Source: Mytilus edulis
Lineage: Eukaryota
Direction: 5' to 3'
Assembly (NCBI RefSeq): GCF_963676685.1
Contig: NC_092351.1
Span: 20,460,001-20,524,000 of the forward strand
Length of the DNA stretch: 64,000 nucleotides
Position numbers and translations under genes: made by a program. The notes beneath the pieces were generated by a model that did not search any database, had not been told where the DNA came from, and was given only the letters and a program-made list of their open reading frames with translations. Shown in pieces: positions 33,868 to 55,193 of this stretch; the stretch's first letter is position 1; each line of letters starts with the position of its first letter.

Positions 33868-36800
33868 ATGTGTGAATCAGTAGCCATGATCAGCGTCGTG
33901 GTGATTTTACTATTGCAATGCGTTAGCGGCGCACAGAAAAGTGACCATTGTACAGTACCTACAAAAACTTACAACTCAAAAAGTAAAGTACCACTTACTT
34001 ACTTTTTTTCTTTGTTGACATATTTGTTTGTTCTTATATTAATTAAGATTATGACACAAGATTGACCCCTATACTCACATTTTTGACATTTGTATCTATT
34101 ATGTCTGTTTGTTTTGTTCATACATTGTTGATTACTATGGAATTTTATGCGACTGGCATACACATATGAGATTTGGCTGGCCATAAAATCAAATTTAATC
34201 CATCATTTTCTACAAAGGAAAATGCCTGTTCATAATCAAGAACAGTTGTTTTCAATTCCTTTGGAGTGTTTGTTATACATAATGCACATGTTAAGGTTTT
34301 TCTTTAAGTTTAATGTTTAATAATAATAAATTAAAAAGTAATTCATTTAGCTACTTGTTTTTTTGTAGTATACTCGGTACCAATATTTGATCCTGGTGAT
34401 GACTACCTTGATGTGATCCTCGAATTAAAGTACACAGATAATTCTGGGACGTCTGACGAACACATCATTATTAACATTCTGGTTTGCAATGAAGTAAAAC
34501 TCTTTCATTTTGAAAAGATATTTCTTGGCTCTAGTGACATCCATACAATACAACTTCCGATGAACCAGACATGGATTTTGAATGGATCAGAAACAGCGAA
34601 TAAATCATTATACATAATATGTTCGTCAGAATTTGCTACATATATAAACGTTACCACCAAGATATCATTTAATAATATGAGCATCCCAATTACTGCTAGT
34701 ATTTCTGAAACAACAAGGACGTATTCATATTTTGTTACAACTGTTTGTGATGTTCTAGGACTGTGTCAGATAGCAGTATCTTCAGCAGGCTTGTATGAGA
34801 CTGAAATCAGCATTGTTCTTAATATGAGTTTTGGTGGATGTTCACTGCATTTTAACAACAGAGTTTATACAACAGACGACATGTTTATAGTCACGTTATC
34901 AAGATACACTGCACTACAGCTACAGACAGATTGCGACATGAGTGGTACTGTCATTCACAGTGCTGAAGAACTGACTGTTATCAGTGGAGGTCTGAATACA
35001 ATAATGGGAGAAGGAAAACGACAAACGTTCATGGGTATTAATGCTCCTCTGACGAAACTGGGTAAAGAGTATGTTGTAATAGGTAGCAACTTTTCCTTGT
35101 TCTGGGACTTCATCAAGATCATGACGACAGAACCAGAAACTACGGTCAGGATACTTGGAAAAGACATCAAATTTGGAGAAGCACGTGACTCCATGAGAAA
35201 AAAACTCAGTCGAGAACACCAGTTACATATAAAAGCAGATAAAAAGATAGTTATCACTCAATTTTCATGGGACAATAATACAGAACCTATTTATTCTATC
35301 GTACCCCCTTTTAGGGAAACTTTAAGACCACCATGTTTACAGTCTACTATCTATATTTACAAAGTAGTTGATGACTTAATGCCGACCAATCCGCAATACA
35401 ACCAGAAAATAGCCGTGACAAGGATTCCAGGTACAGATACTGTAATGTTTACCACGACTGACAACAATATTGAACTGCAATGTACCAGCATTAGAAGCCA
35501 ACTCTTAAACAAAGAAATAGTTATTTATAATCTAGAGAGCACACGTTATGTTGACCTTGAGGTAGGTAAAAAAAGTAACATTTAAACATAATATGATAAA
35601 AAGAAACGTTCAGAAAATACACTAATGGTTAAGTGTTAAATAATGTTTCCCTTTTATCCATTTTGAGATTTTGTTTCAAAAATAGTTAAGACTTTAATCA
35701 TTAATATGAAGTCATAATGATAAATCGAAAGTAAAGCTTGTAGTTAAAATATCTATATTTTTTGAAAATATTGAAAGGCTATATTCTATAATTTTATGAA
35801 ATAAAATGAAAGTTTTGATTTACCAACACATATAAATCCTTAAAAGTGTTTGAAAGGTTTTTTTTAAGGAAACTACTGCAGCCTCTGGATATTCCTATCC
35901 ATCTGATGATGATATATCTAGCGAGAATATCCCTGACGATAATATCCCTGACGATAATCTGTACGGTAAGATATGATAGAATTTGTTCAAACTTAATTTA
36001 AGGCACAGTATTCCTAATAAGGCTGTAATTTGGACTTTATTGAAATTTTGATGTATTGAGAACTCTTTGAAATGCATCTGAATTTAGAAAAATGATAAAT
36101 GTAGCATTTATACATCTGTAAACAAATTCAATTAAGATTAAATATTTATTAAAAAACCCTATTAATGACTAGAATGTACAAAAAGGCGGAACACAATATA
36201 ACACAATTGCTATGTGGTTAGCTTTATGAAGTGAACAACTGGTCGTGAAGTGCTACTGTTTGTAACAATTACATCTGTTCAGTAAGAATAGAATTGATAA
36301 AAAAGTGAAATAATGACATATCAATACAACGTATTCAGTAAGACAAAACACGCATCAATAGAACTAACTGAAAACCATACGATGTATAAATGAGGAATAC
36401 ATTAATCATAACCACCTAGAAATGAATTATTTACAAGAAAAAGGCGAAAGTCATTCCGATTAACATAACTTTTCATTGAACGATTCCTTTTGAAATCTCT
36501 TATAGTAAGGTCTGAACATCCTATAAAAGAAACTACGATTATGCTAGTGTACGACAAAAATTTGTCTTAAGACGATTTACCAACCAGTGTTAAATATAAG
36601 TATAGGACAAGGACAAAGATATGAGTGACTTGAGGTTGAAAATTTTTTTTTTAAATTCTGTATCTGATTGTTGAGAAATTGTTTCAACATGTGAAAGTAT
36701 AAATAAATAGTTGTTGAAACAACAATCAAGCCGTGTTTCACTGGTCATGCCGTTGAAAATGTGAAATTATTTATAATCTAATATCTCATTAGCTAGTCAA

Positions 36801-39800
36801 TTTTTTCAACTTTGAGATTTACAATTAATTATTTATCTTTCTTACAGTCGTTTGAAATCAATACGTTATGAATGAAAAAAAAACACCATACAGATAGAAA
36901 TGATTGCCCAGGCGCATATCAACAACCTGATTAATTTAATCATATCTGATGGTGATCCATCAAAATTAAATTGAAACCCCTCCTGTGTGCCCGAAACATG
37001 TTTAACTGTGCCTTTTTTGAGTTTTGCATGTACAAAGTCTGTAATTCAGTGACTGTCTTTTTTTGCCGTACAATAGTTTCGTCTAGCATGTCTAGTGATT
37101 TATAAGTCAATCAGAGCGTATATTTTGTCGTTTGAGGTGTTTAACATGTTGTCATCTCTTGGCATTTTAAAGATTGAAATGTGGTGTCGGATTTGTTTAT
37201 TGTTGAATGTAGTGTTGCAAATGTATTTGTCATTTAGTGTCTGCAAGAGATACTATAACTGTCTCATTGAAAATAATGCCACATCTTTTGTTTATATTTT
37301 TACTAAAATTCTTTTAGGAAACCGACTTGATAATGGTGGAAGAGAATTCCTCGTAGCGGTACATCCACTTGACCGTGATAATACAGTTCAACCTCAAGTA
37401 TCCCTTGTTGCCATGGCAGACGATGGTTCAGAACTCACCAACATAAACATTGAAATACAAGTGATAACAAATGGAATGGTCGAGTCAATAATGAAAAAAG
37501 ATGTAAATTATCAATATACATATGTAGAGAGTTTTGCAATTGATAAACCATATAACCAAGTCTTACGTGTCACATCACCAATTGATATTAGTCTCCGTAC
37601 AAAGGTATACAGTGAAATACACAATGGTGTGTCCTCAGTTATGCTAAATTACCCAGTTAATGTGCTTGGTAATGAGTATATTGTGGGGTTATTTTGGCAT
37701 AACAACAGTTTGTCCACATGTTCAGTTGTCGCCATGCATGATAGTACAACGGTTGAAGTCATGTTACCAGACCTTGAACAACCAATCACAGTTAGTGTTG
37801 TGGGCAACGAAAAAAATGTTGTGTACACTAACAATATGAAAATAAGTAAAATGTTACTTAGATATACTTCATTGGTATTTACCTCCACTGATGACTTAAC
37901 TGGTACCATGATCAAAACAGATAAAGCCGTGGCTATATTCTGTGGCTACCACTCATTAATTGACAATATTGAAGAACCTTTCTCTACCATAGAACAGTTT
38001 CCTCCAATTAACACGTTTGGTTTTGATTTTAATATTAGGACCGACTTCACTTCATTAGACGATTTTGATACTGATGGCTTTGTTACATCATCCTTTAAGG
38101 TTATTGCCGTACAGCAGTGGACAGCAGTTACTATTATATCTACAAACAATACATCATTGACTGAATTTCTAAACTATCCAGGAAATTTCACAGAAGGTCA
38201 ACTGACAGAGAATGTGCAAATTGCATCATCGAAAGAGGTTTTGGTTTTACTAGAATTTGCCAGTAGAAGGGACAAAAGTTTGATTGTGGTAACGCCAAAA
38301 CAAAACACTAAAAAAAATTATTTTATTTCTGAATCAGATAATATTTTCACAGCTAATGAAGTGTTTGTCAGCGGAAACAAAAGCATAAAGTTTAATTTCA
38401 CAAATATGATAACTAATGTTGTTGAAAGTAAGCCGTATATAACGGATCCATTCAGTGTGTCGTTCGATGAACACGAGGCTGGATATATAATGCATGGAAA
38501 TGGAATTTTTGGGAGTGCTGCTGGTCTGTACTTGCAACCAAACAAGGTAAGAAGGGGAGTACATGCAGAATACAAAATTTACAAATACAAATTGAACAAA
38601 AGTATATAAACAAAATCATTTAAAAAAACCCAAAAAATAAGTCATTTTTCAAGCTGTATACATATTAACATCATCTAAACTAAAGACACTGGATTGTCAT
38701 TGTTGCTCTGAAAGAGTGCTGTTTATAATTTCGGGGGAACGTTTATGGATAACAGGATGCAAAGCATGTTAAAACGATGATTTTTTATTCTTGCTACTGT
38801 TAATACTAGAGAGGATATTTAGGGATCATAGAAACACTTACCCGCAGCATATGATAAGATGTAACCAATTGTATTTGCTAATTAAGAAGCGGAATAAAAT
38901 AATTTAAAACAACTTTGTAGTTTTATAGCTTAACTGATATAAAGAATTAGAAATTTATATTGTAAATTTTACCATGTCTCTGAAGTGACCAGTGGGTCAG
39001 ATTTGTATAACATTGCTATTTGATTAATTGTCTAAATTTTACAACACTTTTTCACGTGTAGAAAACCATGTGAGTGGATTCCTTACTTCTTGTTGGTCAA
39101 TGATCTAGCGGGGTCAGTACAAATTTACGTGCCATGTGTGCACTTCCTTTATCATTAACTTTCGTCTTGATAACTTGTGATTCTAAAACATTGCGTGAAA
39201 TTTAAATTTCCCACCCGAAAACCTCCCTTAACATACTGCACCAGATTGTTATTTTGTCTCTATCAATATTCGAATCAGATGCTCAACTTCCCATGTTATT
39301 ACAACCTTCCAAAACAAACCGCAAGTATTTTATTTTGAAAGGAATATTTCTTTGCTCAAACAACTTTGGAACGATATAAGGGAAAACTAATAAAATATTA
39401 TTAAGTAGTCCAAAACATTTAACTACTTCAAAATTGATTAAGATTTTGCTTTTAACAAACAAGCACCATAACTCTGTAAATGTTAAGTGAAACAGACGAA
39501 AATCGTAGTTAACCTATTCATGGTTTAAAATGTTCAAACAATGGAAATTTAACCAATGACGTTATTTTCATTTTGGTGTACAAATAATTAGATTACCCAT
39601 AGTCCTTTAGATTCTGAAAAGGCATATTTTCAATTGTGAAATTTCCGTTCCTCTGTAGCATCATTCCAGCAGCTGATGATTTGTCATAAAATCTGCACTT
39701 TTCTTTTCATTTAGATATGTTTGTATGGTTTAGAACCAGATAGGGACTGTGACGGTTTAGATAAGGAGGAGTTGTGTGCTCTATATTCTTATAACGACGG

Positions 39801-42800
39801 TAATGTAATACTTTGTTTACGTCAGATTCCACTAATTTTATTCATATCGCAATTTAGTAGTTAAAACGACTAAAAACTATTGAAATTAACGCGCAACGTC
39901 AAAATATTAAAAAAAATCTATTATTTTGGTAGTCATCAATTCAACAAACTGCAAAGTTTTGAAATTATCCTGAACAGCAAATATCTAGGTGAAATTCAAC
40001 ATTAAATTATCTAAATATTCTTCCGCAGATTAGAGTATTTTTTAAGTCTCAGATTTGTATGATTTATTTACATTGACAAAACATGTAATAACAAAAATGA
40101 AAATGTAAAAAGTTTACCGAAATCGAACAAGGAAAGACGAGTGACTCCAGCTGATCATACATTAAAGGAAAATAAATCCGATTTAACACACTAGATCTTG
40201 CATTTAATTCAATGTTAATTTGGAAAAAAAGATAACATGTTTGAACAAGATTATGGCTGTATCTTTTTTCAGTTCTATGTCCTTCTTCTTGAAGTCATTA
40301 CAATTGAATTGATCGTTCATGAGTATTTACGTCACATCTGACATCTATATTCCCCACTAATCAAACTAACACTCCCCATGTTATCGTCTCTTAAATTAAA
40401 CGAGTAACACGATGGGTGCGAGTAGTGAAGCAGAATCTGCTTACTCGTCCGAAGCACCGAGTTGAATCGCGATTTTCGAAGAGGGTTTATGTTGCTAGAA
40501 CGTTACTTTGTTGTGCTATCATGTGTTAAATTTGTTTAAAGTTATCGATTATTTTAAATAACATGTTTGAAAAACTGTCGTTTGAATCCAATGTTAAATT
40601 ATGTTATACACGTCAATATTTGTATTGTTCGTTAAATGATCTGAACATTGGTTTCCTCATTTTGTTTTATATATGTCGCCAGGACATAGAAGAACACTCC
40701 GTATGAAAACATCCAATGGCACCGGGATAGATTGGTTAAACCCTAGCGACATGTACTCAATACAACCTTTAGGCGACATTGAACACGATGCACGGTTTAC
40801 TGATTTCTTCAAATTTCATGTTAAGACATGCCACAGTGCATATGTTTACTTATCATCAACTTATGGGTTTGAATTTTATGATGTGTATGGCATGAATACC
40901 TGGTTTATGTATGAAATTATTTTTGGTGATGAAAATGGAACAACGATAACATGGAAAAAATTGTCGTCCGGCGGTGCTGGAAAACAGAGAAGTTTAAACA
41001 TTCCACAAATGAATTGTAATGAGTTTACAAGTTTCTGGATTCAGTGGAATGATATCGGCGAAATAAGAATTGGCGAAGGAGATCATGTTGGTGAAATGAC
41101 ATTGATTGGATGGCAAACACATTTGGACTCTGAGATGCCTTTTAGAATATATAACGTTGGAATCAAATCAGGGATCGATCTTGAAGTTGAATGGATAATT
41201 CATTTGACAGGTAATACTATCATGAACTTGGAGGAAAAAGAAAAGTTATAATTTCAATGACAAAATCAAAAGCTCAAACATAATTATAATCCTGGTACTT
41301 TTGATAACTATTTACACCACTGGGTCGATGCCACTGCTGGTGGACGTTTCGTCCCCGAGGGTATCACCAGCCCAGTAGTCAGCACTTCGGTGTTGACATG
41401 AATATCAATTATATGGTCATTTTTATAAATTTTCTGTTTACAAAACTTTGAATTTTTCGAAAAACTAAGGATTTTCTTACCCCAGGAGTAGATTACCTTA
41501 GCCGTATTTGGCACAACTTTTTGGAATTTTGGGTCCTCAATGCTCTTAAACTTTGTATTTATTTGGCTTTTTGAAATATTTTGATCTGAGCGTCACTGAT
41601 GAGTCTTATCTAGACGAAACGCGCGTCTGGCGTATAAAATTATAATCCTGGTACTTTTGATAACTATACCAAACGAATGGATAACTACTATCATATTCTT
41701 GACTTGTTACAGGCATTTAACTAGCTGAAAATGACGGATTGAACCTGGGTTTATAGCTAACTAAACCTCTCACTTGTATGATAGTCAATTATATTGACAC
41801 AATGTGGGAACAAAACTAACAGACATAAAAAGTATAGATGAAAAAAATGAGGGTACAGATGTTAACATTGTATTAATATCTTAATCATTTTAAAAACAAA
41901 CAAATATATAAACAAACATTTACCATGACACAATAACAAAAAGACGGAGGTATAAGTAGAAAGCCACGTCATATGTAACAAAGAAACAAAAAAAGGCATA
42001 TAGACACAGGATTTAAGTAAAAACGAAAGATTAGAATTTACAAATATTCATAGAATGTTGACGGGAAATATAGAGCCACGAAGCTATTCAATGACAGGGT
42101 TTATACATGTGATGTACTTGTATTATCAGTCCTATGTTATGACATACGCCATCTAGTCAAAAGTAAGAAGTTTATATCCCCTATATTAAACATGTTTGAT
42201 ACTGTTTCAAATTAATAAGGAACAAATAAAAGACAGTTTGAGCCCTTTTCTGCTATATCCTATAGCTATACATAAGGGGTAATATAAGTAAAGGAAATCA
42301 CACAATACATTAAGAAATACAATACATTAAGAAATACAATACATTAAGAAAATTAATTCATAATTGTTCTCTCGACTTAACGAATGTCTCCACATGCAGT
42401 TCATAGGATAGTAATTTAATGACTTTTTGAAGAGCTCCATATTTTAAAATTAAAAGTAGAACATTCCGATACTTCATATTTAGGATACTGACATCATATG
42501 TCAGTAAGTTACATATATCATTTGTCATTTGTTCTTTACCTTATTTTCAAGGTCTGTCTGTTTGACATGTTAATCTGAACCATTGTCTTCGTTTTTATGG
42601 TTTATTGGTCAACGTTATATTTTCCAGTTCTTAGATACCGGATGTTTATTTTTCGGATCATTTGAATTTACCTCATTTTCATGTTTCGTTTGTCCAGTTA
42701 TCTAGAGGGTTGAAAAACGAATATTTGTACGATTTTAATCTGATAACATAAAATGAGATACTGCAATCTAAACGCCTTTTAAGCCCCTTTGTTCTGCTCT

Positions 42801-45800
42801 TTGTCTACCTAAGATTTATTAGTTTTTCGGATCCGCCACTTGTCTACCTTATATTTATCAGTTTCCGGATCTGTCACTAGTCTACCTTATATTTATCAGT
42901 TTTCGGATCTGTCACTAGGCTACCTTATAGTTATCAGTTTCTCAGTTCTGCCACTTGTCTACCTTAGATTTATCAGTTTTTCGGATCGACCACTAGTCGT
43001 CCTTTTATTTATTAGTTTCTCGGTTCTGTCATTAGTCTACCGTAAATTCGTCTGTTTTTCGGAGGTGCCACTTGTCTACCTTAGGTTTATCAGTTCCTCG
43101 AATCGACCACTTTTCTATGTTAGATTTGACTGTTTCTCGGAGGTGCCACTTGTCTACCTTAGATTTATCAGTTTTCGGATCTGTCACTAGTCTGCTTTAG
43201 ATTTATCAGTTCCTCGGATCGACCACTTGTCTATCTTAGATTCGTCTGTTTTTCGGAGGTGCCACTTGTCTACCTTAGATATATCAGTTCCTTGGAACGA
43301 CCACTTTTCTATGTGAGATTCGTCTGTTTCTCGGAGGGGCTTCTTGTCTACCTTAGATTTATCAGTTCCTCGGATCGACCACTAGTCTTTCTTAGATTCG
43401 TCTGTTTCTCGGAGATGCCATTTGTCTACCTTAGATTTATCAGTTTCTCGGATCTGTCACTTGTCTATCTTATATTTATCAGTTTCTCGGTTCTGCCACT
43501 TGTCTATCTTAGATTCGTCTGTTTCTTTGGGGTGCCACTTGTCTACCTTAGATTTAACAATTCCTCGGATCAACCACTTGTCTACCTTAGATTTATCAGT
43601 TCCTTAGATCGACCACTTTTCTTTGTAAGATTCGTCTGTTTTTTCGGAGACGCCACTTGTCTACCTTAGATTGATCACTTCCTCGGATCGACCACTTGTC
43701 TACCTCTGATTTACCAGTTCCTCGGATCGACCACTTTTCTATGTAAGATTCGTCTGTTTTTTTGAGGTGCCACTTGTCTACCTTAGATTTATCAGTTTTC
43801 GGATCTGTCACTAGTCTACCTCAGATTTATCAGTTCCTTGGATCGACCACTTGTCTATCTTAGATTCGTCTGTTTTTCGGAGGTGCCACTTGTCTATCTT
43901 AGATATATTAGTTCTTCGGATCGACCACTTTCCTATGTAAGATTCGTCTGTTTCTCAGAGATGCAACTTGTCTACCTTAGATTTATCAGTTTCTCGGTTC
44001 TGTCACTTGTCTATCTTATATTTGTCTGATTCTCGGTTCTGCCACTTGTCTATCTTAGATTCGTCTGTTTCTTGGAGGTGCCACTTATCTACCTTAGATT
44101 TATCAGTTCCTCGGATCGACCACTTGTCTATCTTAGAATCGTTTGTTTTTTCGCGGAGGTGCCACTTGTCTACCTTAGATTTATCACTTCCGCGGATCGA
44201 CCACTTGTCTACCTTAGATTTATCAGTTCCTCGGATCGACCACTTTTCTATGTTAGATTCGTCTATTTCTCGGAGGTGCTACTTGTCTACCTTAGATTTA
44301 TCAGTTACTCAGTTCTCTCACTTGTCTATCTTAGATTTATCAGTTCCTCGGATCGACCACTGTTCTATGTTAGATTCGTCTGTTTCTCGGGGGTGCCACT
44401 TGTCTACCTTAGATTTATCAGTTACTCGGTTCTGTCACTTGTCTATCTTATATTTCTTAGTTCCTCGGATCGGCCACTTGTCTACCTTCGACTTATAGTT
44501 CCTCGGTTCTGCCATTTGTCTACCTTATCTTACTGCGAAGTGTAATTGGTGTTGATTTGCTTTCAGATGAATTAGACCAGATTAAAATAGAAGCACCTCT
44601 TGTTATGGAAAAATTTCTAAATACCACACATGACATTCTTAACAGATCAGTGCCGTTAGAAATGTATGGCTTCAATATGGACAAAGAGAAATCAATGTTG
44701 TTTAGTGTTAGAGCATGTCGTGACGTCAGACTATATCTTTATCCAAGAACGGCTAATATACAAGCAAAAACAACGGGAACGGTCTTGTATGAAATTCAAC
44801 TGATAGATTTCAAAGTTAAAGTTAGCAAATTGACAAACGAAATTAAACATCTATTGATGGAAAATATACTTGATGTCTCGAATTGTTTTATAAGTAACTC
44901 ATATGGATATTTCTGGATAAGTTGGATGGAGAATATATTAACCTTTGGAACTGGTCGCAATGTAAGCGCCATTCCGATTTTAGAAACGCCAATAGACACT
45001 TCAACTATTCAGGATATTTATATAGCTTCCCTTACAAATGACAGTCGAATGTGGATTATCAACAGAAAAGGTAAGAAATCACAAAATAGAAATACGTAAT
45101 GGGCCTATACGCTCAACAGTTGTATCAGTACAGATCCAACCTATTTATCTTACAGACTTCATATTTATGACCCGCAACGAAGTTGTCGGTGCCATATAGT
45201 TTTACCCCTGTCCGTAATTCCGTAATTCCGTCATTCTTTCATTCCGTCATTCCGCAACAAACCACTATACAAAGTTTTTTCTAAACGCCTTCAGATATAG
45301 GGCTGATTTTTGGAATGTGAGTTAACTATGATGAGTTACAATTCAAGTTTATGTTTCGTTCTGATCTGCTAATTTTTGCTGAAATTACGGGCTTTGGACT
45401 TTGATAAATTGTTGAAAATCATAGTTATACAGAGTTTTTTTCTAAACGCCTTCAGATATTGGGCTGATTTTTGGTATGTGAGTTAACCATGATGAGTTAC
45501 AGATCAAGTCTAAGTTTCGTTTCCGCTCCGCTAATTTTTGCCGAAACTACGGGCTTTGGACTTTGATAATTTTTTTGAAAATCACAGTTATACGGACTTT
45601 TTTTCCAAACGCTTTCAGATGTAGGGATGATTTTTTTGCATGTGAGTTAACCAAGATGAGTTACAGATCAAGTTAAAGTTTTGTTCCGCTCGGCTAATTA
45701 ATGCTGAAATTACGGGGTATGGACTTTGATAAATTGTTATAAATCACAGTTATATGGACTTTTTTGTTAACGCTTTCAGATATTGGGCTGATATCTGGTA

Positions 45801-48800
45801 TGTGAGTTACCCATGATGAGTTACAGATCAAGTCTAAGTTTCGTTTCCGCTCCCCTTATTTTTGCCGAAATTACGGGCTTTTGACTTTGATAATTTTTTT
45901 GAAAATCACAGTTATACGGACTTTTTTTCTAAATGCTTTCAGATATTTGGCTAATTTTTGGTATGTGAGCTAACAATGATGAGTTACATACTAAGTTTAA
46001 GTTTCGTTCTGCTCCGCTAATTTTGGCCAAAATTATGGGTTTACAACTTTGAAAATTGTTGAAAATCACAGCTGTACGGACTTTTTTCTATACGCTTCCA
46101 GATTTAGAGCTGATTCTTGATATGTGAGACTACCATCATGTTTGTGTCCACATGTGTTATTGAAATTGTAGATTTTTCCAATTTTTGAGACGGGGCCATT
46201 GGTGTCGCTTTGACACATCTAGTTTTCATAATTTGTTTGAGAAAAGCATGACTAAAATCAGAGTAAAGATATTACATAGCACCGTAAGTGTGACTTACTG
46301 TTTGCAATACATATTTAATTTTAAAAGATTTTAGCAGTTAAAATAAGAACTAAAATATAAAGCGATAGAAACAATATCATGCAATATTATTAAAGTGTTG
46401 CATTGAAACCTAAAAATAGATGTTTATTCAAAGGATAGTAAATTTCATTTACACGAACCTCATATGAATGATTAAGCTCTATAAACAACTTCTCCTTAAA
46501 AATAAGGATGCAATATCCCATTTGCAATTAAGGTATATACCGGTATAAAAAATTCAAATCAATCGTTTTGTATCTATATGAAAATTTGATACATGTTTTG
46601 ATTAATATGTGTTGACGAAATGCCTGTCTTAATATTTTACTAAAATATGATTTGTTCTCCATCATTTAATTTAAATTTATTTTGAATATTATTATTTAAA
46701 TAAATTCGAAAGGATAAGTTTTTTCAAATACACAAAATAATGTATTATAAAATATCATAAATATAAAAGTGTTGTATCATTAGCAACATTTATTATTATT
46801 ACAAAAAAAGTATGTGCAAAATAAAATCTCGTACGACGTCGTCGAAATAGTCTGTTTCATACCTTTACAATTTCCTTATAGAGATTCCCACCTATATTGG
46901 AGATGATAACACATACGTCATGGATTTCGATCTAGATGGTGACTATGATGAAGATTGTTCCATGAGAATATATGGTGAATGATTATAAAGGATTTGATAG
47001 AAACAATTTAAAATAAGAGCATATTAAAAGGCTATCGATTAAAAGTCATAAGTCATAGAACGACAGACATAACGAAAAGATAAAGAGACACACAAAATAA
47101 ACTAAACAATTATACCATGCAGACAACACGAAATAAGTTAACCGGAATTTTACTGAGTAAACGTTCAGATTCTTGCAAAAAATCAAATGAAGTTGCACAT
47201 TGGATTAAAATACTACATTTAATTTGAATATATATATATATATGAAAAGAATATCTCTTGGACCATGTTGACAGTTGTTAAAAAGACATCATTGTCAGTC
47301 ATATAATTTGATGCCGTACTGACTATGCAATAACAATATATCAAACATAATTGCAAGAAAACTTTGCATTGGTCGAGATTAAACAGGAGGCTTTACCAAG
47401 GGGTAGTCAGAACTTATAAATTGAATAGAAACCAACAAAATCATAGAAAATGAAAAATTCAAAGTTAGTTTATTAAACTAGTTTAAAAGACTAAGTAACA
47501 CGAACACCACCAAACCGATAGTGATCCCAGGTGATCCGGCAGGTAAGCATATCCTACTCTAAATGTCATACCCGTCGTGTTACTTCTACAAAATATGTTG
47601 ATATCAAATTATTAGACATCACTTAATAGCAAATAGGTTATTGTCTCTTACATAATCATGAGAAATTACATCATTCCTAAATCAGTGGTCATATAAATTT
47701 TTGTAGCCATGCTAAATGCTAATTTGGCAATAAAAGCTGATAAATTGCAAGAGATTTATTTTCATCAGTTATACCTATCAAGTTCATGTATGAACAACAA
47801 TCTTTTTTAAACATTTTTGTGAAATATTTAGATCACACATAAAGAAAAAGCATGATGATTGTTTTTATAAAAACGTTATTTATAATTCATATATTTGTTT
47901 ACATAAAGAAGCTTATTTTTCTGTTACAGATTGTGGAGTTCCTGTTTTTGATAATGCGCATGTTCACATACCATATCCTGGGCACACCGATAACAAATAT
48001 GGAAATGTACATACTGTAATATGTGCTGAAGACTACACACATTCAGGAAGTACTGTCACTCGGTGTCTGCCGACAGGAAAATGGTCAAAGGAATTTCGGT
48101 GTTTACCAAGTAAATCATTCTGTTGTTCATTATTTATTTTCATAACATTTTTGACCGATGAGAATAGAATAATATCTAACTCACTATGGTTACAATTGAT
48201 TGAATAGATTGAATATAGTCATATCAATAATGTTGAATGTCAAAATAATGACATTTGGATACTTAGCGTGGAAAATAAGCCACTAGCTCGATGATAGCCA
48301 CATTTCCACGTATGATACAGCATGCCTAGTAGTTCTTAACTGGGTTAAATTATAAATTATATATGATCTAATTATCATATAAAAATTTTTGAGGACCTTC
48401 ATCACAAAATAAAATGATATAGAATGCACTTAAGAAATTTACCAAAAACTAACCAAGACCATTCGTCCAATAATTAAAATGTTTATATTTGTAGACTGTA
48501 AAGAGCCACCACAGTTACTGAACACGGGATCGATAGATGTCAATAGTAGGAAGTATTCAACATGGTCAACGTACAATTATGACTGTTTTACTGGCTCTTC
48601 TATGACAGGCGATAATACGATTATCTGTCAAGATAATGGTGAATGGAGTGAGCCTCGGTTTGAATGCAGTGAGTAAACCCCTAGAATTATGTATTGATGA
48701 ATCAACAGAAAGAGAATCCTTATTCCTTGTTAAAGGGATAAGTATGAAAACGCATTAGTTAGTTGCTTTCACGCGCGAGTAATATGAGCATGATGTTCTC

Positions 48801-51625
48801 GATTGGTGATCTTATTTAAAGCAGTATGACAAGATGAAAGTAGTATATAGTTTACGATAATTGACAATTCGCAGAAATCTTTTGACTGTATTTTCTTAGA
48901 CCCTGTGAGGGTAATTTTAATGATTGAATTGTTTTAAAAAAAAATGATAGGAGAATATTCAAAACAATGTAAGCACTGTACAAGATTTTGTCTTTTTAAT
49001 GACAATTAAAAAAACATCACATTAGAAAAAAGAAACAAAAAAACATTCCTTTTATTTATAGTTTATTTGAGCATTATTGATGAGTCAATTGTAGACGAAA
49101 AACACGTCTGGCGTCCTTAAAGAGGGCGAAATATACCAGAGGAACAGTCAAACTCATAAAAATAAACTGATAACGCAATGGTAAAAAATTAAAAAGACAA
49201 ATAATAGTACACAAGACACAACATAGAAAACACGAACCCCACCACACACTTGGGGTGATCCCAGATGCTCTGGAAGGGTGAGCTGATCCTACTCTACATG
49301 TGGCACCCATCGTGTTGCTTATATTATTACAAATCCGGTATACAGTCTAAGTCGGTAGGTCACATTCGTGAAAAGGGACGGGTATTGGAGCTACGACATT
49401 AGGAACATATCCGATATCATCTGTTAAACATCCATCAAAAGGATCTGTGCAGAGTAAGAGTGTGAATTCAAACGTGTTCCTTTACAAGAACATAATTTAT
49501 CAGAGTCTCAACAAAGTAAAATAGATTTCAACACTAATGCAACCTTGTAAGAACAAATATATATTTTTTAAAATACGCAATGTTTACAAAGAGGCAAAAA
49601 TTTCCAAATTAATAGTTATTAAATTTCAGTCTGCCCGCTACCACCAAGGAAACTGAATACCGATTATATTAATCCTGATTATGATGCTAAATATCGCCAT
49701 GGAGCCGCCTATCATTATAAATGTATGGCAGGATATTCAATGACCGGTAATGGTACGATCACATGTTTAAAAAACGGTCAATGGACAGAGCCTTCTTTCA
49801 CTTGTACAGGTAATTTTAGCATCGTTAAAGGAATAAACACACGGGCATTGTCTTAGGCATGTACAGCTAAGTGAGAACATGTATAGTTACTATATGATAT
49901 ATCAAAGGAAGAACTATTACATATTTTAAAATATTTGTCTGGTCGAAGTTCTTGTAAATATATGCGACACTGAATATGTGATCTTTATGAACCTCAACTA
50001 TTTCATGGCTAAACTATCCAAGACTAACACTATTACAAAGCATGGTTGCGTATACAAGTAGCGTACAACATTGGTTGTAATTGAATACAAGTGTGTAAAA
50101 TTGTGAATGGAAGTGGGGTATGTGTCAAAGAGACAACAACCAAACCAAAGAGCAGAAAAAAGTCAAAGGCCACTAATGGGTCTCCAATACAGCGTGAAAT
50201 TCCAGCACCCTGTATTAAATGGAGAATATTTAAATTACCCCGATACAATATAACAGATGATGATACCAAATGGACTTCTAGTTAAACACATAGCCGCTAA
50301 AAACACCCATATAGATATCATTTATGAGGAGGGCATATTAACAACTTTATTATTTTAATGTCCAGGCTATAAATTTTGAAATTATTATTAAGGAACTAAG
50401 GGTTCAACTCCCTCAGGCAAAGTTTGCTTTAGATAAATTTCGCTATTTATTTGAGGTATTTTTGATATATAGCTCTTCAACGGTGTCGGTACTTATACAT
50501 TGTCGGATTTCAAATGTTTGGCTTTGAGCGTTCCTGATGAAGGTAAATCCAGAAAGGCGCTTCGGAAGCAAGAAATTATTAAACACGTTTTTCTCAATAT
50601 TTTACATCACTGGGTCGATACCTCTGCTGGTGGACTAGAAGTCCCCGAGGGTATCTTCAGCTCAGTAGTCAGTACTTCGGTACTGACATGATTTAACAAA
50701 CTTTACTTAAATTGTCCGTTGATAAACTTTGAAATTATTAAGAGACTAAGATTTCAACTCCCTCATGCAAAGTTGGCTTTAGATGAATTTGGCTATTTAT
50801 TTTAGGTATTTTTGACATATAGCTCTTCAACGGTTTCGGTAATTATTAAGAAACTAAGGTTTCAACTCCCTCATGCAAAGTTGGCTTAAGATGAATTTGG
50901 CTATTTATTTTAAGTATTGACATATAGCTCTTCAACGGTTTCGGTACTTATACATCTTCGGATTTCAAATGTTTGGCTTTGAGCGTTCCTGTAGAAGGTA
51001 AATCCAGAAAAGCGCTTCGGATGCAAGAAACTATTTAACATGTTTTTCTCAATACTTCTCCTTCCTATGCTATGATTATTGGGCATCATGTTATTGTATC
51101 TTACAAAATCAATTCTTTGTAATTATATACTGTAGATTCATGAATATTCATTGGATACCAATTTTCGTGGATTTCGTGGGAACAGTGGAAATACAAGTTT
51201 CGTTAAAGGAAAGTATGCAGACTTTGCACCACGAATTTAAATATCAATCCACGAAATTTGGTACCCACAAAAATAAATGAATATACAATAAACATGACTA
51301 ACGTGCAACATATCTTACATGCTTAACGTACTTTCTTTAAGATGACTGTAAATGTCCATGTAACACGCCTGATTTGACTGAGGAAGATATTCAACAAATG
51401 AAGGATAAAATACGAAGAGAGAACTTAATTGACAAAAAGAGCGTTTCGAAATATAAGAGAAAGATAACAAGTGCCCCCGACAATAGATTCTCAGCAAAAG
51501 CAATTGGATACGTTGGAGTGGCTTGCTTGACAACGACCGGATTGGTTGTAGTCCTCATTGATGCTGTGACCCTTGTGAATACTCTGAACACTGTGTTTCA
51601 GAACATCAAAGGATTCTTTTTTTGA
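33868..51625 (+). CDS. Predicted type I membrane protein: signal peptide, 2x IgGFc-binding-protein N-terminal-like domain, 2x farnesoic acid O-methyltransferase-like (Methyltransf_FA) domain, 3x Sushi/CCP, C-terminal TM; ~1553 aa
   Basis: Exons 33868-33982, 34369-35561, 35869-35965, 37318-38546, 39715-39799, 40683-41210, 44567-45070, 46882-46974, 47930-48109, 48495-48668, 49630-49809 and 51342-51625 total 4662 nt, phase-consistent and GT-AG. Signal peptide MISVVVILLLQCVSG. IgGFc-like motifs DNGGREF, PVNVLGNEY, DLTGTMIKTDKAVAIFCG, EQFPPINTFG and DMSGTVIHS. FAMeT-like motifs F.VKTC..YEIIFG..CNEFTSFWIQW..IG.G and FSVRAC..YEI..FWISW..FG.G. Three C-..C-..C-..GxW..C CCP exons. Tail CKCPC...RKITSAPDNRFSAKAIGYVG followed by a hydrophobic helix. 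Confidence 0.82.
41282..41667 (+). mobile_element. Non-LTR retrozyme monomer (family A; 356-nt unit plus 30-nt terminal redundancy)
   Basis: Exact 30-nt direct repeat AATTATAATCCTGGTACTTTTGATAACTAT at 41282-41311 and 41638-41667, enclosing an intact type I hammerhead. Inserted into another interspersed repeat. Confidence 0.85.
41591..41632 (+). ncRNA. Type I hammerhead ribozyme (intact core)
   Basis: Stem I CGUCA/UGGCG; core CUGAUGA (41596-41602); stem II GUCU-uaucu-AGAC; GAAA (41616-41619); minimal palindromic stem III ACGCGCGU; predicted cleavage after GUC at C41627. Confidence 0.88.
42795..44530. repeat. 39-bp minisatellite array (~44 units)
   Basis: Unit CCACTTGTCTACCTTAGATTTATCAGTTCCTCGGATCGA, with recurring variants (..TTCGTCTGTTTCTCGGAGGTG; ..TTTATCAGTTTCTCGGTTCTG). 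Confidence 0.93.
45164..46224. mobile_element. HINE-like element with ~5.5 internal ~162-bp tandem repeats
   Basis: 5' stem-loop plus (ATTCCGTC/A)n microsatellite. CGCCTTCAGATAT-like anchor at about 45287, 45448, 45610, 45771, 45934 and 46093. Ends GACACATCTAGTT. An inverted partial copy is at ~59320-59645. Confidence 0.78.
49130..49430 (-). mobile_element. 3' tail fragment of an RT retroelement (same family as 53566-53950)
   Basis: Reverse complement matches 53625-53950 (GGATATGTTCCT..., AGCAACACGATGGGTGCCACATGT..., CCTCTGGTAT..TTCG.CCCTCTTT). Confidence 0.7.
50365..51053 (+). mobile_element. Tandem retrozyme array (family B; ~350-nt unit, two hammerhead copies)
   Basis: AACTAAG..TTCAACTCCCTCA.GCAAAG recurs at about 50395, 50744 and 50851. 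Hammerhead-like GCGUUC-CUGAUGA-AGGUAAAUCCA-GAAA-(G/A)GCGCU-UC-GGA.GC at 50528-50569, and a core-mutated copy (CUGUAGA) at 50983-51024. Confidence 0.75.
50528..50569 (+). ncRNA. Minimal type I hammerhead ribozyme-like motif (family B)
   Basis: CUGAUGA at 50534-50540, short GG/CC stem II, GAAA at 50552-50555, near-palindromic stem III, UUC cleavage triplet, imperfect stem I GCGUUC/GGAAGC. Confidence 0.6.
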
Positions 51626-53319
51626 AAGTGAATTGTTCTTGTCATTGAATGTATCATTTTTGTTTTCTGTTTGATCACACCAATATGAATACTTCATTTA
51701 TTTTTGGTATTGTTTAACGTAGGTAATACAATATTGTACAAGTTGTAAATATCTGAACGAGAAGCATTCATAGTAAATGGTTTGTGTTATAGTGAAACAC
51801 TTAATTGTGTATGTATTGTAACTCGTAATGAAATTTTTGGATTACAGAGGATGTGTCAAATTTTCCTAAGCTTGTAGTTGCTCATATCTACATCTTTGTG
51901 TTCTATGTTGGATAATTGTATCATTGGTATTTATACCCCATCTTATATTTTTCTGTTAACATGTATAAAAAAAAACCCAACAACAGTAAAATGACGGAAA
52001 ATGACAGTATCAGTAATATATATGTCATGATAGAAGTACTGAGCTGGTAAAAATATAAGTGCGTGTCTTTATGATTAAACAGACATGACACGTGTCAATA
52101 TAATTATCATACTTTGACATATATATATTGTTTTTAATCTACAAATTTTCTATTGCACTCGAGTATGTTTCGTTTACCGTTTAGTACAGGAGAAACACGA
52201 TGGGTGTCACATGTAGAGTATCATATATTGCATGTAAGCCTTCTTGAGCACTTGAGATTCATCCGGGCTTTTCGTGGGGTTCTTGTTGCCCATTCTAGTT
52301 TTCTGTGTTGTGTTCCATAAACTGTTGTTTGTATTTTAGTCGTTTTTTGTTTTTTTGACATGGCGTGGTGAGTTTGTCGTTGATTTATATGTTTGATATC
52401 TTCCGACGACAACATATGTTGGTACACTTCAGGTTTTCTTTTATATTGTTTATTTTTTTGTACTTTTGTCTTTCTTTTTTACTAATATTCTTTGTCTATA
52501 TGCTTTTTTGTTTTTCATAGATTAGTTATTTGTTTGTTTTTATAGTGATTAAGATTATTAACAGTGTTGACTGCTGTAACCAAATTTTAACATTTGAAAC
52601 CTATTATGTCTGTTTGTTTTGTTCACACATCGTTTTCAATATAATGGAGTTTTATACGACGGTCATCCAAGTGAGAGGTTTAGCTAGCTATAACACCAGG
52701 TTTAATTCATCATTTTCTACATAAGAAAATGACAGTGCCAAGTCAGGAATATGACAGTTGTTATTCATTTGTTTGGTCTGTTTGAGCTTTTGATTTTGCC
52801 ATTTGATTAGGGGCTTATAGTGTTTTGTGGTATATTTTGTACATACTATATGTCTTAATATGTTAGTTATAATTTGAATTGAGTGATTGTTAATAAAGGT
52901 AATTTGATTTGACTTTTTTTTATAGTCGTAGTTGATTAAAGGCATGTTTATTCAGTAACCAATTATTTAAGGTTGTCAGCAGTTTGTACTCATTATTTCC
53001 GGCCTGTTAGTCAAAGAATCATTTGAATCTTGATTAACGGAGCACAAACTTTTTCAAACCATCATAAATTAAGAACAAAAAAATTAGAGATTGCTACATT
53101 AGAGTTTGGTTTCAATAGATATGAGAAGATTTGGTATGAGTGACAATGACTCTCCATCCAAGTAACAATTTGTAAACCATTATAGGTGAGAGTACGGCAT
53201 TCGGCACGGAGCCTTGGCTCACACTGAACAGCAAGCTATAAAAGGCCTCAACAATGACTTGTATAAAACCATTCAAACGGGAAAACAAAGCTTATAAGTG
53301 CGATATATTCCAGGCAAAT

Positions 53320-53565
53320 AAAGATGTTGTCATCATCAAAGATACAAGACGCATTATTGTGTACGCCATACGTGTGTTTTGTCTACAACAGACGACTCAC
53401 CAGTAATGCTCAAATAAAACTCAAATAAAAGACCAAATAAGGTAAAAAATTGAAGAGTATTAAGGATCCCAAATTCCGAAATGTTTTATCAAATACTTTG
53501 AAGTAATCTATTCCTGGGGCAGACAATTCTACTTACTTCAAACAATTCAAAGTTCTGTGAACAGT
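53320..53565 (-). mobile_element. Degenerate family A retrozyme fragment
   Basis: Reverse complement reads GAGCATTACTGGTGAGTCGTCTGTTGTAGACAAAACACACGTATGGCGTAC plus upstream homology to 41440-41640. The core is mutated. Another degenerate plus-strand copy is at ~49060-49115. Confidence 0.65.
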
Positions 53566-53950
53566 TTTTACGGACGCCATCACGAGTTGGTTGACCGTTA
53601 TGGAATAACCGTTTCACAAATGCTATCGGATATGTTCCTTACGTCGTAACTACAATCCCCTTCCCTTTCATAAATGTGACCTACCGAATTAGACTATTTA
53701 CCGGATTTGTTATCTCAAAAGCAACACGACGGGTGCCACATGTGGAGCAGGATCTGCTAACGTTTCCGGAGCACCTGAGATCACCCCTAGTTTTTTAGTG
53801 GGGTTCGTGTTGTTTATTCTTTAGTTTTCTATGTTGTGTCAAGTGTACTATTGTTTGTCTGTTTCCTTTTCATTTTTAGCCATGGCGTTGTCAGTTTATT
53901 TTCGATTTTTGAATTTGACTGTCCCTCTGGTATCTTTCGTCCCTCTTTTT
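53566..53950 (+). mobile_element. 5'-truncated retroelement: C-terminus of an RT-associated ORF plus structured 3' UTR
   Basis: 53566-53649 reads FYGRHHELVDRYGITVSQMLSDMFLTS*, recognised as a C-terminal motif of abundant bivalve RT (Penelope-like) ORFs. The UTR recurs as fragments at ~27720-27980, 40400-40500, 47490-47590, 49130-49430, 52190-52400 and 59200-59320. Confidence 0.62.
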
Positions 53951-53954
53951 GAAT

Positions 53955-54632
53955 GATCATAGTTCCTTGATTATGGACGATTAGTCCTCGAGAATATCTT
54001 TAGATAAGCACTGAGTTCTTCAGTTCTGACATGATTTTGTAACAATTTGTTCTGAAAATCTCTGTTGATAAATCAATAAATGATTAAGAAACACAATTTC
54101 CAACTGCCTTAGCAAAATTTACTTTAGTGAATATGGCCTTTTTATATCAACTTTGGTCATAAAGTTCTTCATGTGATTATTTCTGATACAAACTTGGCTT
54201 TAAAAAGTTCGTGATATCAGTTAATCCACAAAAGCGTTTTAAACGCACGAAATCAATATAGATTCATTCTCATTTACTCAGTAGTCAGTACTTCGTTACA
54301 AACATGATACTCAACAAAATGTTCTTTGTTGATAACTTTAGAAATTATTGAGAAATTTGAGTGACTCTAACCCTAAGACAAATTTGACCTTGATGAATTT
54401 GACGATTTGAGGTTTCGAGGCGTGCAGTAAAACTATTTTTATGTACTTGGCTTTCAAATGTTTTGGTTTAAGCGTTCCTTGTGAATGTTAATCAAGAAAT
54501 GCTCGTCGGACGCACTAAATCAATAACGTATCATTTTCATATAATAGTACTCGATCGATACCACTACTGATGGACTACTAGTATATGTCTCCGAGGGTAT
54601 TATCATCATAAAACTCAGTGGTCAGTACGGTA
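53955..54632 (+). mobile_element. Old, degenerate family B retrozyme array (~2 units)
   Basis: Homology to 50365-51053: CTCAGTAGTCAGTACTTCG (54277), AGCGTTCCTTGTGAATG..GAAATGCTCGTCGGACGC (54471), TCGATACCACTACTGATGGAC..CCGAGGGTAT (54555). Confidence 0.6.
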
Positions 54633-55193
54633 CAAAGGAGTAGGCAAGGTAAGATCCCTTTTTAATTTGGTCCCAAAATATAGCGTTTTAACAAACTTGT
54701 TAAATCGTTAACTTTTATTTATTAATTGGAAAGTAACATGCTTTTGTTTCATAAATTGCTGATTTTAAACATTAAATGCTAATTTTAAGACGGTTTTGTC
54801 TAAAATGGAAATGGCCGCACTTATGTTCTTTCTTATATATATGTTGTGTTTAATGATAATGTATAATATATATATATATTGAGCTATTTTGAGAGTAAAC
54901 ACGAATGCCATCACTTCATTGTAGACAAAAATCATCTAAAAAGTGACGTTACATGGAATATTTGATAGATTGTTCACATTTTTAGCTTCAATTTGCGCGT
55001 TTTTAATGACCAAGTCTGTCGAAAACGTTTACAATAACCAATTGTTATTATTATTAAAGATTATTGTTTATACACATAATTATATTATATATTTCAGGAT
55101 ATATTGGTAAACTAAGCTATTTTTAGATATAATAATACTGGAAATTTTAGTTTCGATTTAAATAACTTCCTAATATATGGCCGCTCTTTTATA

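What the first reader, a model, noticed from the sequence alone, without database searches (positions are those of the whole stretch)
41282..41667. Intact hammerhead-ribozyme retrozyme monomer with terminal redundancy inside a receptor-gene intron, in sense orientation
Seen: a 356-nt unit flanked by an exact 30-nt direct repeat, containing a textbook type I hammerhead (CUGAUGA / GAAA / GUC, palindromic stem III ACGCGCGU). Established: non-LTR retrozymes, small hammerhead-bearing retroelements that produce circular RNAs, are known in metazoans including mussels, and minimal palindromic stem III favours dimeric cleavage. Inference: a monomer plus short redundancy is what reverse transcription once around an RNA circle would leave. 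Because it is sense to the host gene, the pre-mRNA could self-cleave in the intron between the two FAMeT exons.
Basis: partly seen in the sequence, partly recalled or inferred. Interest (0 to 1): 0.8.

Follow-up and report, generated by a model that had tools for sequence, protein, structure and literature searches.

The report
Solo hammerhead retrozyme copy in intron
This is one ordinary stray copy of a known, very abundant ribozyme-carrying mobile element of mussels, sitting inside a gene's likely intron; with only one ribozyme it cannot cut out an RNA circle by itself.

Summary
Window 41282-41667 is a 356-nt unit plus an exact 30-nt repeat. It carries a type I hammerhead at 41590-41633: Rfam RF00163 gives 33.1 bits against a cut-off of 34, E 1.9e-6.

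It belongs to a described family, the non-LTR retrozymes of mussels (PMC7229834). The genome holds thousands of copies, including 356-bp tandem arrays 96-99% identical to this one.

- **One ribozyme only.** This copy has one cleavage site, so it cannot release a unit-length RNA or a circle.
- **Clean insertion.** Two paralogues of the older repeat around it run straight through the insertion point. The insert is therefore exactly these 386 bp, with no target duplication.
- **The 30-nt overlap is a family trait.** Insertions end at one fixed 3' position about 41 nt past the cleavage site. Their 5' ends vary, with a hot spot where this copy starts. That points to target-primed reverse transcription of a circle or multimer.
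- **Helper unknown.** A Penelope-like helper is plausible only by analogy.
- **Not shown.** The intron, sense orientation and pre-mRNA cleavage are inferred.

The scan holds notes on other hammerhead repeats in this genome, and a withheld report on this stretch.

The parts
41282..41667 (+). Retrozyme insertion, 386 bp = 1.08 units of 356 nt
   Evidence: Direct repeat. 100/99% matches to arrays elsewhere in the genome. Exact limits come from two paralogues of the surrounding repeat that lack the insertion.
41282..41311 (+). 5' copy of the 30-nt terminal segment. Its first base lies beside the family's 5'-end hot spot (unit positions 2-6).
41638..41667 (+). 3' terminal segment. Its end is the family's fixed 3' terminus, about 40-41 nt past the cleavage site.
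41590..41633 (+). Type I hammerhead ribozyme. Predicted cleavage between C41627 and T41628. Rare C at 41610 in loop 2.
   Evidence: Rfam RF00163, 33.1 bits, E 1.9e-6; motif scan; for position 41610.
41313..41401 (+). Conserved domain at the start of the unit, shared with a second repeat family in the window (50601-50691, 84.6% identical). Two hairpin stems are kept through changes on both sides.
   Evidence: blastn; alignment A2. The stems were read by eye; no covariation test was run.
41215..41281 (.). Left part of an older interspersed repeat split by the insertion (its left limit is approximate)
   Evidence: Alignment with paralogues L089 and L090.
41668..41958 (.). Right part of the same older repeat (3843 first-look candidates; the 39 other scored matches are 75-80% identical)
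40673..41210 (+). Upstream putative exon with a Methyltransf_FA (FAMeT) domain. The ORF runs to 41251. A GT at 41211 after ...GACAG is the likely donor (read by eye).
   Evidence: ORF; Pfam PF12248, E 6.8e-11; sequence. No transcript evidence.
44557..45099 (+). Downstream ORF, a possible next exon. Its FAMeT nature is weak.
   Evidence: ORF; no Pfam hit at E 0.01; BLASTP against the first exon E 0.009, 27% over 75 aa.

Best explanation
Window 41282-41667 is a young, solo, non-coding copy of the abundant non-LTR hammerhead retrozyme family already described in mussels. Shown: it is 1.08 units long, it has an intact type I hammerhead core, it differs at 3 of 356 positions from the closest array unit, and it is inserted flush (no target-site duplication, no deletion) into an older interspersed repeat. 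That repeat lies about 70 nt downstream of the likely splice donor of a + strand exon. Inferred mechanism: retrozyme RNA whose cleavage site was uncut or re-ligated (a circle, or a multimeric transcript) was copied by a helper reverse transcriptase primed at the chromosomal break. Synthesis began at the family's fixed start point about 41 nt 3' of the cleavage site. It ran once through the whole unit and stopped, on meeting the stretch just 3' of the ribozyme for the second time, beside the position where many other copies also end. That leaves one unit plus 30 nt. Consequence: the locus has one cleavage site. A transcript through it can at most be cut once, slowly because helix III is only 2 bp and no second ribozyme is nearby. 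It cannot yield a 356-nt linear or circular RNA. It is most likely an inert passenger of the intron.
For: Ribozyme. Family and arrays: (123 matches scored from 40 of 1500 candidates; arrays of 356-bp units at 96-99% identity). Exact 22-mers of the tail occur 3175 times and of the conserved domain 6458 times. Published family: about 5000 hammerheads in 350-390-bp repeats, circular RNAs, in vitro self-cleavage at about 0.1 per min (PMC7229834, passages read). Limits and absence of a duplication. Fixed 3' end: 16 of 16 independent loci picked by full-length similarity end within unit positions 30-36. 902 of 3175 exact tail 22-mers (28.4%) are followed by a non-unit base, against 376 of 6458 (5.8%) at a control position. 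Older subfamilies at 76-94% identity show the same terminal piece (L033, L034, L038, L039). 5' ends: in 38 independent loci anchored only by their 3' end, 29 are shorter than a unit and 6 start at unit positions 2-6 (P 4e-5). These six leave only 26-30 nt, with flanks that share at most a 41-44-nt inverted match. The window copy starts at position 1 and L017 at position 6. No duplication signal in 37 loci: mean longest shared string 4.76 against 4.47 in shuffled pairs. Single ribozyme. GC 38.2%; 3 differences from the array unit.
Against: No experiment or read-level RNA data bears on this locus. The laid runs were contigs only, so starts, ends and circles cannot be seen. The Rfam score is just under the curated cut-off. 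Circle and linear multimer cannot be told apart as templates. The stop just 3' of the ribozyme is an inference from junction positions; three 5' ends (L045, L061, L073) had to be placed by eye at positions 338-344, because the script stopped at subfamily differences. No helper element was identified. The active hammerhead fold is not the predicted minimum for the 44-nt motif (-5.7 against -10.7 kcal/mol), and the rare C41610 could affect activity. The gene model, and so 'intron' and 'sense', rests on ORFs with Pfam hits only.
Confidence: 0.8

Rival explanations
1. One reading: reverse transcription exactly once around an RNA circle left a monomer plus a short redundancy, and that redundancy is a specific mark of a circular template. 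The sense-oriented ribozyme then cuts the host pre-mRNA in the intron.
For: The copy spans the cleavage site and exceeds one unit by 30 nt. Circles of this family are abundant according to PMC7229834. The strand matches that of the flanking domain-bearing ORFs.
Against: The same 3' end occurs in fragments of 26-1293 nt, and the same 5' region is a general hot spot. The overlap is therefore a by-product of a fixed start and a preferred stop, and a multimeric linear RNA would give the same product. Only one ribozyme is present, with a 2-bp helix III, and the active fold is not the predicted minimum. The published rate for a mussel repeat is slow, about 0.1 per min. There is no transcript evidence for the host exon.
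Confidence: 0.3
2. The copy is a remnant of a longer tandem array at this site, trimmed to 1.08 units by unequal crossing-over or deletion, and is not a primary insertion.
For: Arrays are common in the genome, and recombination between units can shrink them.
Against: Shrinkage keeps the outer ends, so it cannot be excluded outright. But most insertions in the 3'-anchored sample are at or below one unit (29 of 38 are shorter than a unit), so a short primary insertion is the simpler reading. Both ends sit at family-typical positions, and the target is otherwise undisturbed.
Confidence: 0.1
3. The family is moved by a LINE-type (non-Penelope) reverse transcriptase that recognises the 3' terminal segment, as SINEs are, or it integrates at pre-existing DNA breaks without an element-encoded endonuclease.
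For: A fixed 3' end with heavy 5' truncation is the classic LINE/SINE signature. The lack of target duplications fits break repair. The 8 Penelope-like loci examined share no sequence with the unit.
Against: No LINE with this tail was seen: the six loci that hold the tail alone have essentially unrelated upstream sequences. There is no poly(A) or microsatellite tail. The literature favours Penelope-like elements through shared hammerheads, tandem copies and co-occurrence (PMC7229834 discussion; preprint 10.64898/2026.07.22.740005).
Confidence: 0.25
4. The hammerhead-like motif is a chance match and the repeat is an ordinary satellite or SINE without ribozyme function.
For: The Rfam score is below the gathering cut-off. 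The whole-unit circular fold is no more stable than shuffles (z -1.0; 37 of 200 shuffles fold as well).
Against: E 1.9e-6 over the full model. A sister copy is over the cut-off. Every core position is present. The family matches published elements with demonstrated cleavage and circles.
Confidence: 0.03

Closest known systems
Non-LTR retrozymes of metazoans, in particular the Mytilus galloprovincialis retrozyme (Cervera and de la Pena 2020, PMC7229834; review PMC7761336)
   Same: A type I hammerhead with a 2-bp helix III and a palindromic loop. A unit of 356 bp, inside the published 350-390 bp range. Low GC (38.2%). Tandem arrays and thousands of copies. No coding capacity. The sequence is present in RNA-library contigs.
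   Different: This locus is a solo 1.08-unit copy with one ribozyme, so it is not a source of circles. No published sequence was at hand, so identity with the published clones was not tested. The organism's name is hidden; '14 large contigs, 1.37 Gb, as in Mytilus' is my recollection of the karyotype and not a call result.
Solo ('monomer') retrozyme copies described in vertebrates (Li, Clavereau and Pollet 2026, bioRxiv 10.64898/2026.07.22.740005)
   Same: Dispersed single full-length copies beside arrays. They are regarded there as offspring that cannot transpose further. 43.9% of Xenopus tropicalis retrozyme copies overlap introns.
   Different: That work covers vertebrates plus three insects and a coral, not molluscs. 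In the passages I read it gives no junction anatomy.
Penelope-like elements (PMC8557442, PMC3846280, PMC4209133)
   Same: Hammerheads near the end of the element. Frequent 5' truncation. Partial tandems. An optional extension ('tail') of 30-40 bp, 31 bp in one case. The 26-31-nt terminal module seen here is of that size.
   Different: No sequence similarity between the unit and 8 Penelope-like loci of this genome, which carry minimal hammerheads of another type. None of 20 GIY-YIG hits on contig C1 lies within 34 kb of a retrozyme 3' end. In one such family the homology runs at least 165 nt past its hammerhead, not about 40 nt.
SINE/LINE partnership (stringent-type 3' end recognition); recalled, not read here
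   Same: A fixed 3' end, 5' truncation and non-autonomy.
   Different: The template must contain a joined ribozyme site, multi-unit products occur, and there is neither a poly(A) tail nor a target duplication.

Membership tests
Hammerhead ribozyme type I (Rfam RF00163) | Conserved core CUGANGA ... GAAA ... and a cleavage triplet UH (here GUC) | tested here: met
   Sequence; pattern search gives 1 match against 0.09 expected; alignment to the model.
Hammerhead ribozyme type I (Rfam RF00163) | Covariance-model score at or above the curated gathering score (34 bits) | tested here: inconclusive
   33.1 bits, E 1.9e-6, full model length; no hit at gathering. A 98%-identical sister copy scores 36.4 bits.
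Hammerhead ribozyme type I (Rfam RF00163) | Three helices with helix I open (both ends of the RNA in helix I) | tested here: met
   The structure line of the model alignment. Helices of 6, 4 and 2 bp were read from the sequence. The fold evaluates to -5.7 kcal/mol but is not the minimum of -10.7.
Hammerhead ribozyme type I (Rfam RF00163) | Mg2+-dependent self-cleavage | not testable with these tools
   Published only for a cloned mussel repeat, about 0.1 per min (PMC7229834). Not shown for this copy or its C41610 variant.
Non-LTR retrozyme (metazoan) | Type I hammerhead inside a short repeat unit of 150-450 bp, found as tandem dimers to multimers | tested here: met
   Met for the family: arrays of 356-bp units on C3, C10, C11 and others. 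This locus itself is 1.08 units.
Non-LTR retrozyme (metazoan) | Low GC content (under 45%) | tested here: met
   38.2%.
Non-LTR retrozyme (metazoan) | No LTRs, primer-binding site, polypurine tract or protein-coding region | tested here: inconclusive
   No terminal repeat other than the 30-nt overlap. The only ORF is a 68-aa one on the - strand, 41308-41514, not examined further. PBS and PPT were not searched for.
Non-LTR retrozyme (metazoan) | Expressed as unit-length linear and circular RNA | not testable with these tools
   Contigs of one run on record as RNA (X16) and one guessed to be RNA (X1) cover the unit at high summed depth, while the flanking exon has depth 0. Contigs cannot show circles, and DNA carry-over of a multi-copy repeat is not excluded.
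Non-autonomous derivative of Penelope-like elements | Sequence similarity of the unit to the terminal repeat (pLTR) of a Penelope-like element of the same genome | tested here: not met
   8 loci of 858 GIY-YIG candidates were examined: best blastn E 0.09, no real match. The sample is small, so this is weak evidence.
Non-autonomous derivative of Penelope-like elements | Penelope-type insertion anatomy: 5' truncation, partial tandems, an optional 30-40-bp tail | tested here: inconclusive
   5' truncation and partial tandems are met. A 26-31-nt terminal module exists, but its equivalence to the Penelope 'tail' is only a resemblance.

The most novel reading that the evidence does not exclude
cDNA synthesis on retrozyme RNA starts at one fixed template position. 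That position lies about 41 nt 3' of the ribozyme cleavage site and directly 5' of a conserved structured domain. Synthesis often aborts 26-30 nt later, just before the ribozyme. The result is a family of 'tail-only' mini-insertions, fragments of all lengths, and 'unit plus tail' copies like this one, all without target duplications. This would be the first defined initiation and pause site for animal retrozyme mobilisation. It would fit an internally templating, telomerase-related (Penelope-like) reverse transcriptase working on a circle. I did not see this junction anatomy in the passages I read of PMC7229834, PMC7761336, PMC8557442 or the 2026 preprint, nor in the listings of searches. The supplements were closed and may hold it.
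Probability: 0.35. Interest if true: 0.55.

Novelty: already known. Interest (0 to 1): 0.25.

Why it matters
The element itself adds nothing new. Mussel retrozymes, their hammerheads, their circles and the existence of solo copies are all in print. Intronic copies are also common where this has been counted (43.9% in Xenopus tropicalis).

Two points are still useful.

- **For annotation.** A solo copy with one ribozyme should not be scored as a source of circular RNA. RNA reads on it come mostly from the arrays.
- **For the mobilisation question.** The 2020 review says the repeats show no conserved motif that points to the helper element. The junction survey made here gives a concrete, testable handle: a fixed 3' terminus, heavy 5' truncation, a 5' hot spot just 3' of the ribozyme, and no target duplication.

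Tried and rejected
**Rfam on the whole window.** At gathering thresholds it found nothing. The permissive search was needed.

**Folding.** The 59-nt ribozyme region alone did not return the hammerhead fold (z 0.19). The circular fold of the unit is not unusually stable (z -1.0). No case for or against structure can be made this way.

**tRNA-like 3' end processing.** ARAGORN found no tRNA-like element that could explain the fixed 3' end.

**Target-site duplications.** None at this locus. There is no signal in 37 loci against shuffled pairs.

**Helper element.**
- 8 GIY-YIG (Penelope-like) loci share no sequence with the unit.
- 20 GIY-YIG hits on contig C1 are all more than 34 kb from a retrozyme 3' end.
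- Homology between two Penelope-like copies runs at least 165 nt beyond their hammerhead, so there is no parallel to the 41-nt tail.
- A second alignment used badly chosen coordinates and says nothing.
- The long ORF that abuts a retrozyme fragment in L056 was not searched against Pfam. From its letters (a GDFNAH stretch) I took it, by recall, for a LINE endonuclease part interrupted by the fragment, not for a helper.

That note proposes the 3' UTR of an RT element as a relative of the retrozyme domain. The alignment is not convincing, and no ORF longer than 85 aa lies nearby. Rfam at E 1 found nothing in 50000-54500. Tandem Repeats Finder found nothing in 48500-55500.

**Empty site in other samples.** The 'skip' joints at 41276-41284 to 41668-41693 in run X23 have sides of 22-25 letters and foreign letters between them. 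I take them for paralogues of the older repeat, not for empty alleles. Whether the insertion is fixed or polymorphic is unknown.

**Automatic 5' end extension.** It failed for L045 and L061, which belong to a subfamily that differs just upstream. I placed those two by eye, and adjusted L073. This lowers the hot-spot count from 8 to 6 of 38.

**Rows dropped.** L047 (same flanks as L046) and L053 (same flanks as L052) were dropped as duplicates. L045 was left out of the duplication test. L025 and L030 of the first set are not clean 5' ends, because older copies adjoin them.

**Not done.** The big protein searches, structure prediction and the protein atlas were not used; nothing here rests on a protein of unknown family.
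Full report
**What is there**

The repeat finder reports an exact 30-nt direct repeat at 41282-41311 and 41638-41667, with a spacing of 356 nt.

A hammerhead core pattern occurs once in the 64-kb window, at 41596-41627 on the + strand. 0.09 matches are expected by chance.

Rfam at its curated thresholds reports nothing in the window. A permissive search of 41200-41750 explains why. Hammerhead_1 (RF00163, type I) matches 41590-41633 over the full model at 33.1 bits, E 1.9e-6, just under the cut-off of 34.

The core (CUGAUGA, GAAA, GUC) is complete. Helices I, II and III have 6, 4 and 2 base pairs. Helix III sits in the palindrome ACGCGCGT. Cleavage is predicted after C41627.

The active fold is not the predicted minimum for the isolated motif: -5.7 against -10.7 kcal/mol. 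This is usual for hammerheads with a short helix III (PMC4209133, passages).

**It belongs to a known, very abundant family**

The window's genome is 1.37 Gb in 2368 contigs. A search with the unit gave 1500 first-look candidates. Of these 40 were scored, yielding 123 matches. Many form head-to-tail arrays of 356-bp units at 96-99% identity on several contigs. In the loci I fetched these include a run of about 14 units on C3.

Exact 22-mers occur 3175 times for the tail and 6458 times for the conserved domain. A sister copy's hammerhead passes the Rfam cut-off at 36.4 bits. The unit has 38.2% GC.

These features match the non-LTR retrozymes described in Mytilus galloprovincialis:
- about 5000 type I hammerheads in repeats of 350-390 bp;
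- abundant circular RNAs;
- co-transcriptional self-cleavage at about 0.1 per min (PMC7229834, passages and discussion read).

A 2026 preprint describes solo 'monomers' as offspring that cannot transpose. It finds 43.9% of Xenopus tropicalis retrozyme copies in introns (10.64898/2026.07.22.740005, results and discussion read).

The organism's name is hidden from me. I did not compare with a published clone.

**Limits of this copy**

The sequence right after the copy (41668-41960) belongs to an older interspersed repeat. That repeat has 3843 candidates, and the 39 other scored matches are 75-80% identical.

Two paralogues of that repeat (L089, L090) align to the window on both sides of the copy and run straight through the junction. 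The insertion is therefore exactly 41282-41667, 386 bp. There is no target-site duplication and no loss of target bases.

The copy differs from the unit of the closest array at three positions: 41548, 41576 and 41610. So it is young.

C41610 lies in loop 2 of the ribozyme. About 98-99% of the family depth laid from four public runs has G there (table 3).

**What the 30-nt redundancy means**

I compared insertions across the genome.

In 16 independent loci chosen by full-length similarity, that is without regard to their ends, all 16 stop within unit positions 30-36. I count position 1 at window 41282. Their 5' ends fall anywhere. Older subfamilies at 76-94% identity show the same terminal piece.

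Genome-wide, 902 of 3175 exact tail 22-mers (28.4%) are followed by a base that departs from the unit. At a control position it is 376 of 6458 (5.8%). The odds ratio is 6.4.

I then fetched the first 40 of those 902 junctions by coordinate. Two pairs are duplicates, which leaves 38.
- 29 of 38 are shorter than one unit.
- The lengths run from 26 to 1293 nt.
- Six start at unit positions 2-6 and so consist of the last 26-30 nt only (P 4e-5). Their flanks share at most a 41-44-nt inverted match.
- A weaker cluster of 7 starts lies just 5' of the ribozyme (P 0.008, uncorrected).
- Three 5' ends were placed by eye.

The window copy starts at position 1, next to that hot spot, one full lap further on.

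So the 'terminal redundancy' is the family's standard 3' terminal module plus a preferred stopping place. It is not a private mark of this copy.

**Likely mechanism (inferred)**

A fixed 3' end with heavy 5' truncation is the signature of reverse transcription primed at the target. Copies longer than about 41 nt span the ribozyme cleavage site. Their template was therefore uncut or re-ligated: a circle, as the published model holds, or a multimeric transcript. I cannot tell these two apart.

The start point lies about 41 nt 3' of the cleavage site. It lies directly 5' of a domain that is conserved in a second repeat family of the window, with paired changes in two hairpin stems (read by eye).

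The hot spot suggests that the enzyme often stops just before entering the ribozyme.

**The helper element**

The literature favours Penelope-like elements. Their 5' truncation, partial tandems and optional 30-40-bp 'tail' resemble what I see.

My direct tests did not support a link by sequence:
- 8 Penelope-like loci share nothing with the unit.
- None of 20 GIY-YIG hits on contig C1 is near a retrozyme end.
- One such family extends at least 165 nt past its own hammerhead.

**Host gene and consequences**

ORFs on the + strand carry Pfam domains:
- IgGFc_binding at 34413-35585 and at 37095-38609;
- Methyltransf_FA at 40673-41251;
- Sushi at 48479-48676.

A GT follows ...GACAG at 41211, about 70 nt before the copy. 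The copy is thus probably in an intron and in sense.

No transcript supports this. Both RNA runs had depth 0 over the exon. The second 'FAMeT exon' is weakly supported.

The locus has a single ribozyme. A transcript through it can be cut once at most and cannot release a 356-nt RNA or a circle. In cis it has no partner for the dimeric fold. The published monomer rate is slow.

From memory, not from a call: ribozyme-cut introns can still be spliced if cleavage is slow. I expect little or no effect on the host mRNA.

**RNA data**

Contigs of one run on record as RNA (X16) and one guessed to be RNA (X1) cover the unit at high summed depth. The deepest bin is over the ribozyme, which other families share. 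This agrees with the published expression. It shows neither circles nor that this locus is transcribed.

**Verdict**

The specific inferences are only partly supported: an intact source of circles, the single-lap signature, and pre-mRNA cleavage.

The finding is an ordinary member of a known family. The junction anatomy of the family is the one thing here that may be new. I did not see it in the passages I read or in the listings of searches. The supplements were closed, and Supplementary Figure S9 of PMC7229834 in particular may bear on it.

Noticed in passing
window 50534-50563 and 50601-50691 (+): A second hammerhead-like core (CTGATGA...GAAA...TTC) lies next to a copy of the conserved retrozyme domain, 84.6% identical to unit positions 30-120. 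This belongs to a different repeat family in a later part of the same gene region. Rfam at E 1 did not report it.
   Followed up: partly
window 53362-53564 (-) and 54270-54640 (+): Diverged retrozyme-like pieces: 72.7% identity to unit positions 153-353 on the minus strand, and rearranged bits of the conserved domain on the plus strand. The window therefore holds several old relatives of the element.
   Followed up: no
window 41215-41281 and 41668-41958: The first 750 nt or so of the putative intron are an older, very abundant interspersed repeat (3843 candidates, 75-80% identical). Its left end aligns up to about the likely splice donor at 41211, so the donor may lie at or in the edge of a repeat.
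   Followed up: partly
window 42840-44545 (+): Long ORFs with a reiterated peptide motif (…LVYLRFISFS…), together with high T and low A content, suggest a minisatellite inside the same putative intron.
   Followed up: no
Read laying loose ends at window 41636-41640 (runs X1, X16): Other families continue after the shared ribozyme with a different tail that still contains TCCTGGTA. This short motif in the 3' terminal module may be conserved between retrozyme families.
   Followed up: no
L081 2600 and L082 2599; L086 2608 (+) and 1131 (-): Penelope-like loci of this genome carry minimal hammerhead cores (CTGATGA/CTGACGA ... GAAA) downstream of the GIY-YIG domain. In L086 there are two copies in inverted orientation, as described for such elements.
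   Followed up: partly
L056 1286-2596 (+): A 437-aa open frame ends where an 82-nt retrozyme fragment begins, so the fragment probably interrupts another retroelement. Reading the frame as a LINE-type endonuclease (a GDFNAH stretch) is my recollection; it was not searched.
   Followed up: no
window 58524-59063 (+): A cysteine-rich ORF with repeated CxxC spacing, reminiscent of TNF-receptor-type repeats, lies downstream of the transmembrane-like exon at 51374-51625. It may be a separate gene.
   Followed up: no
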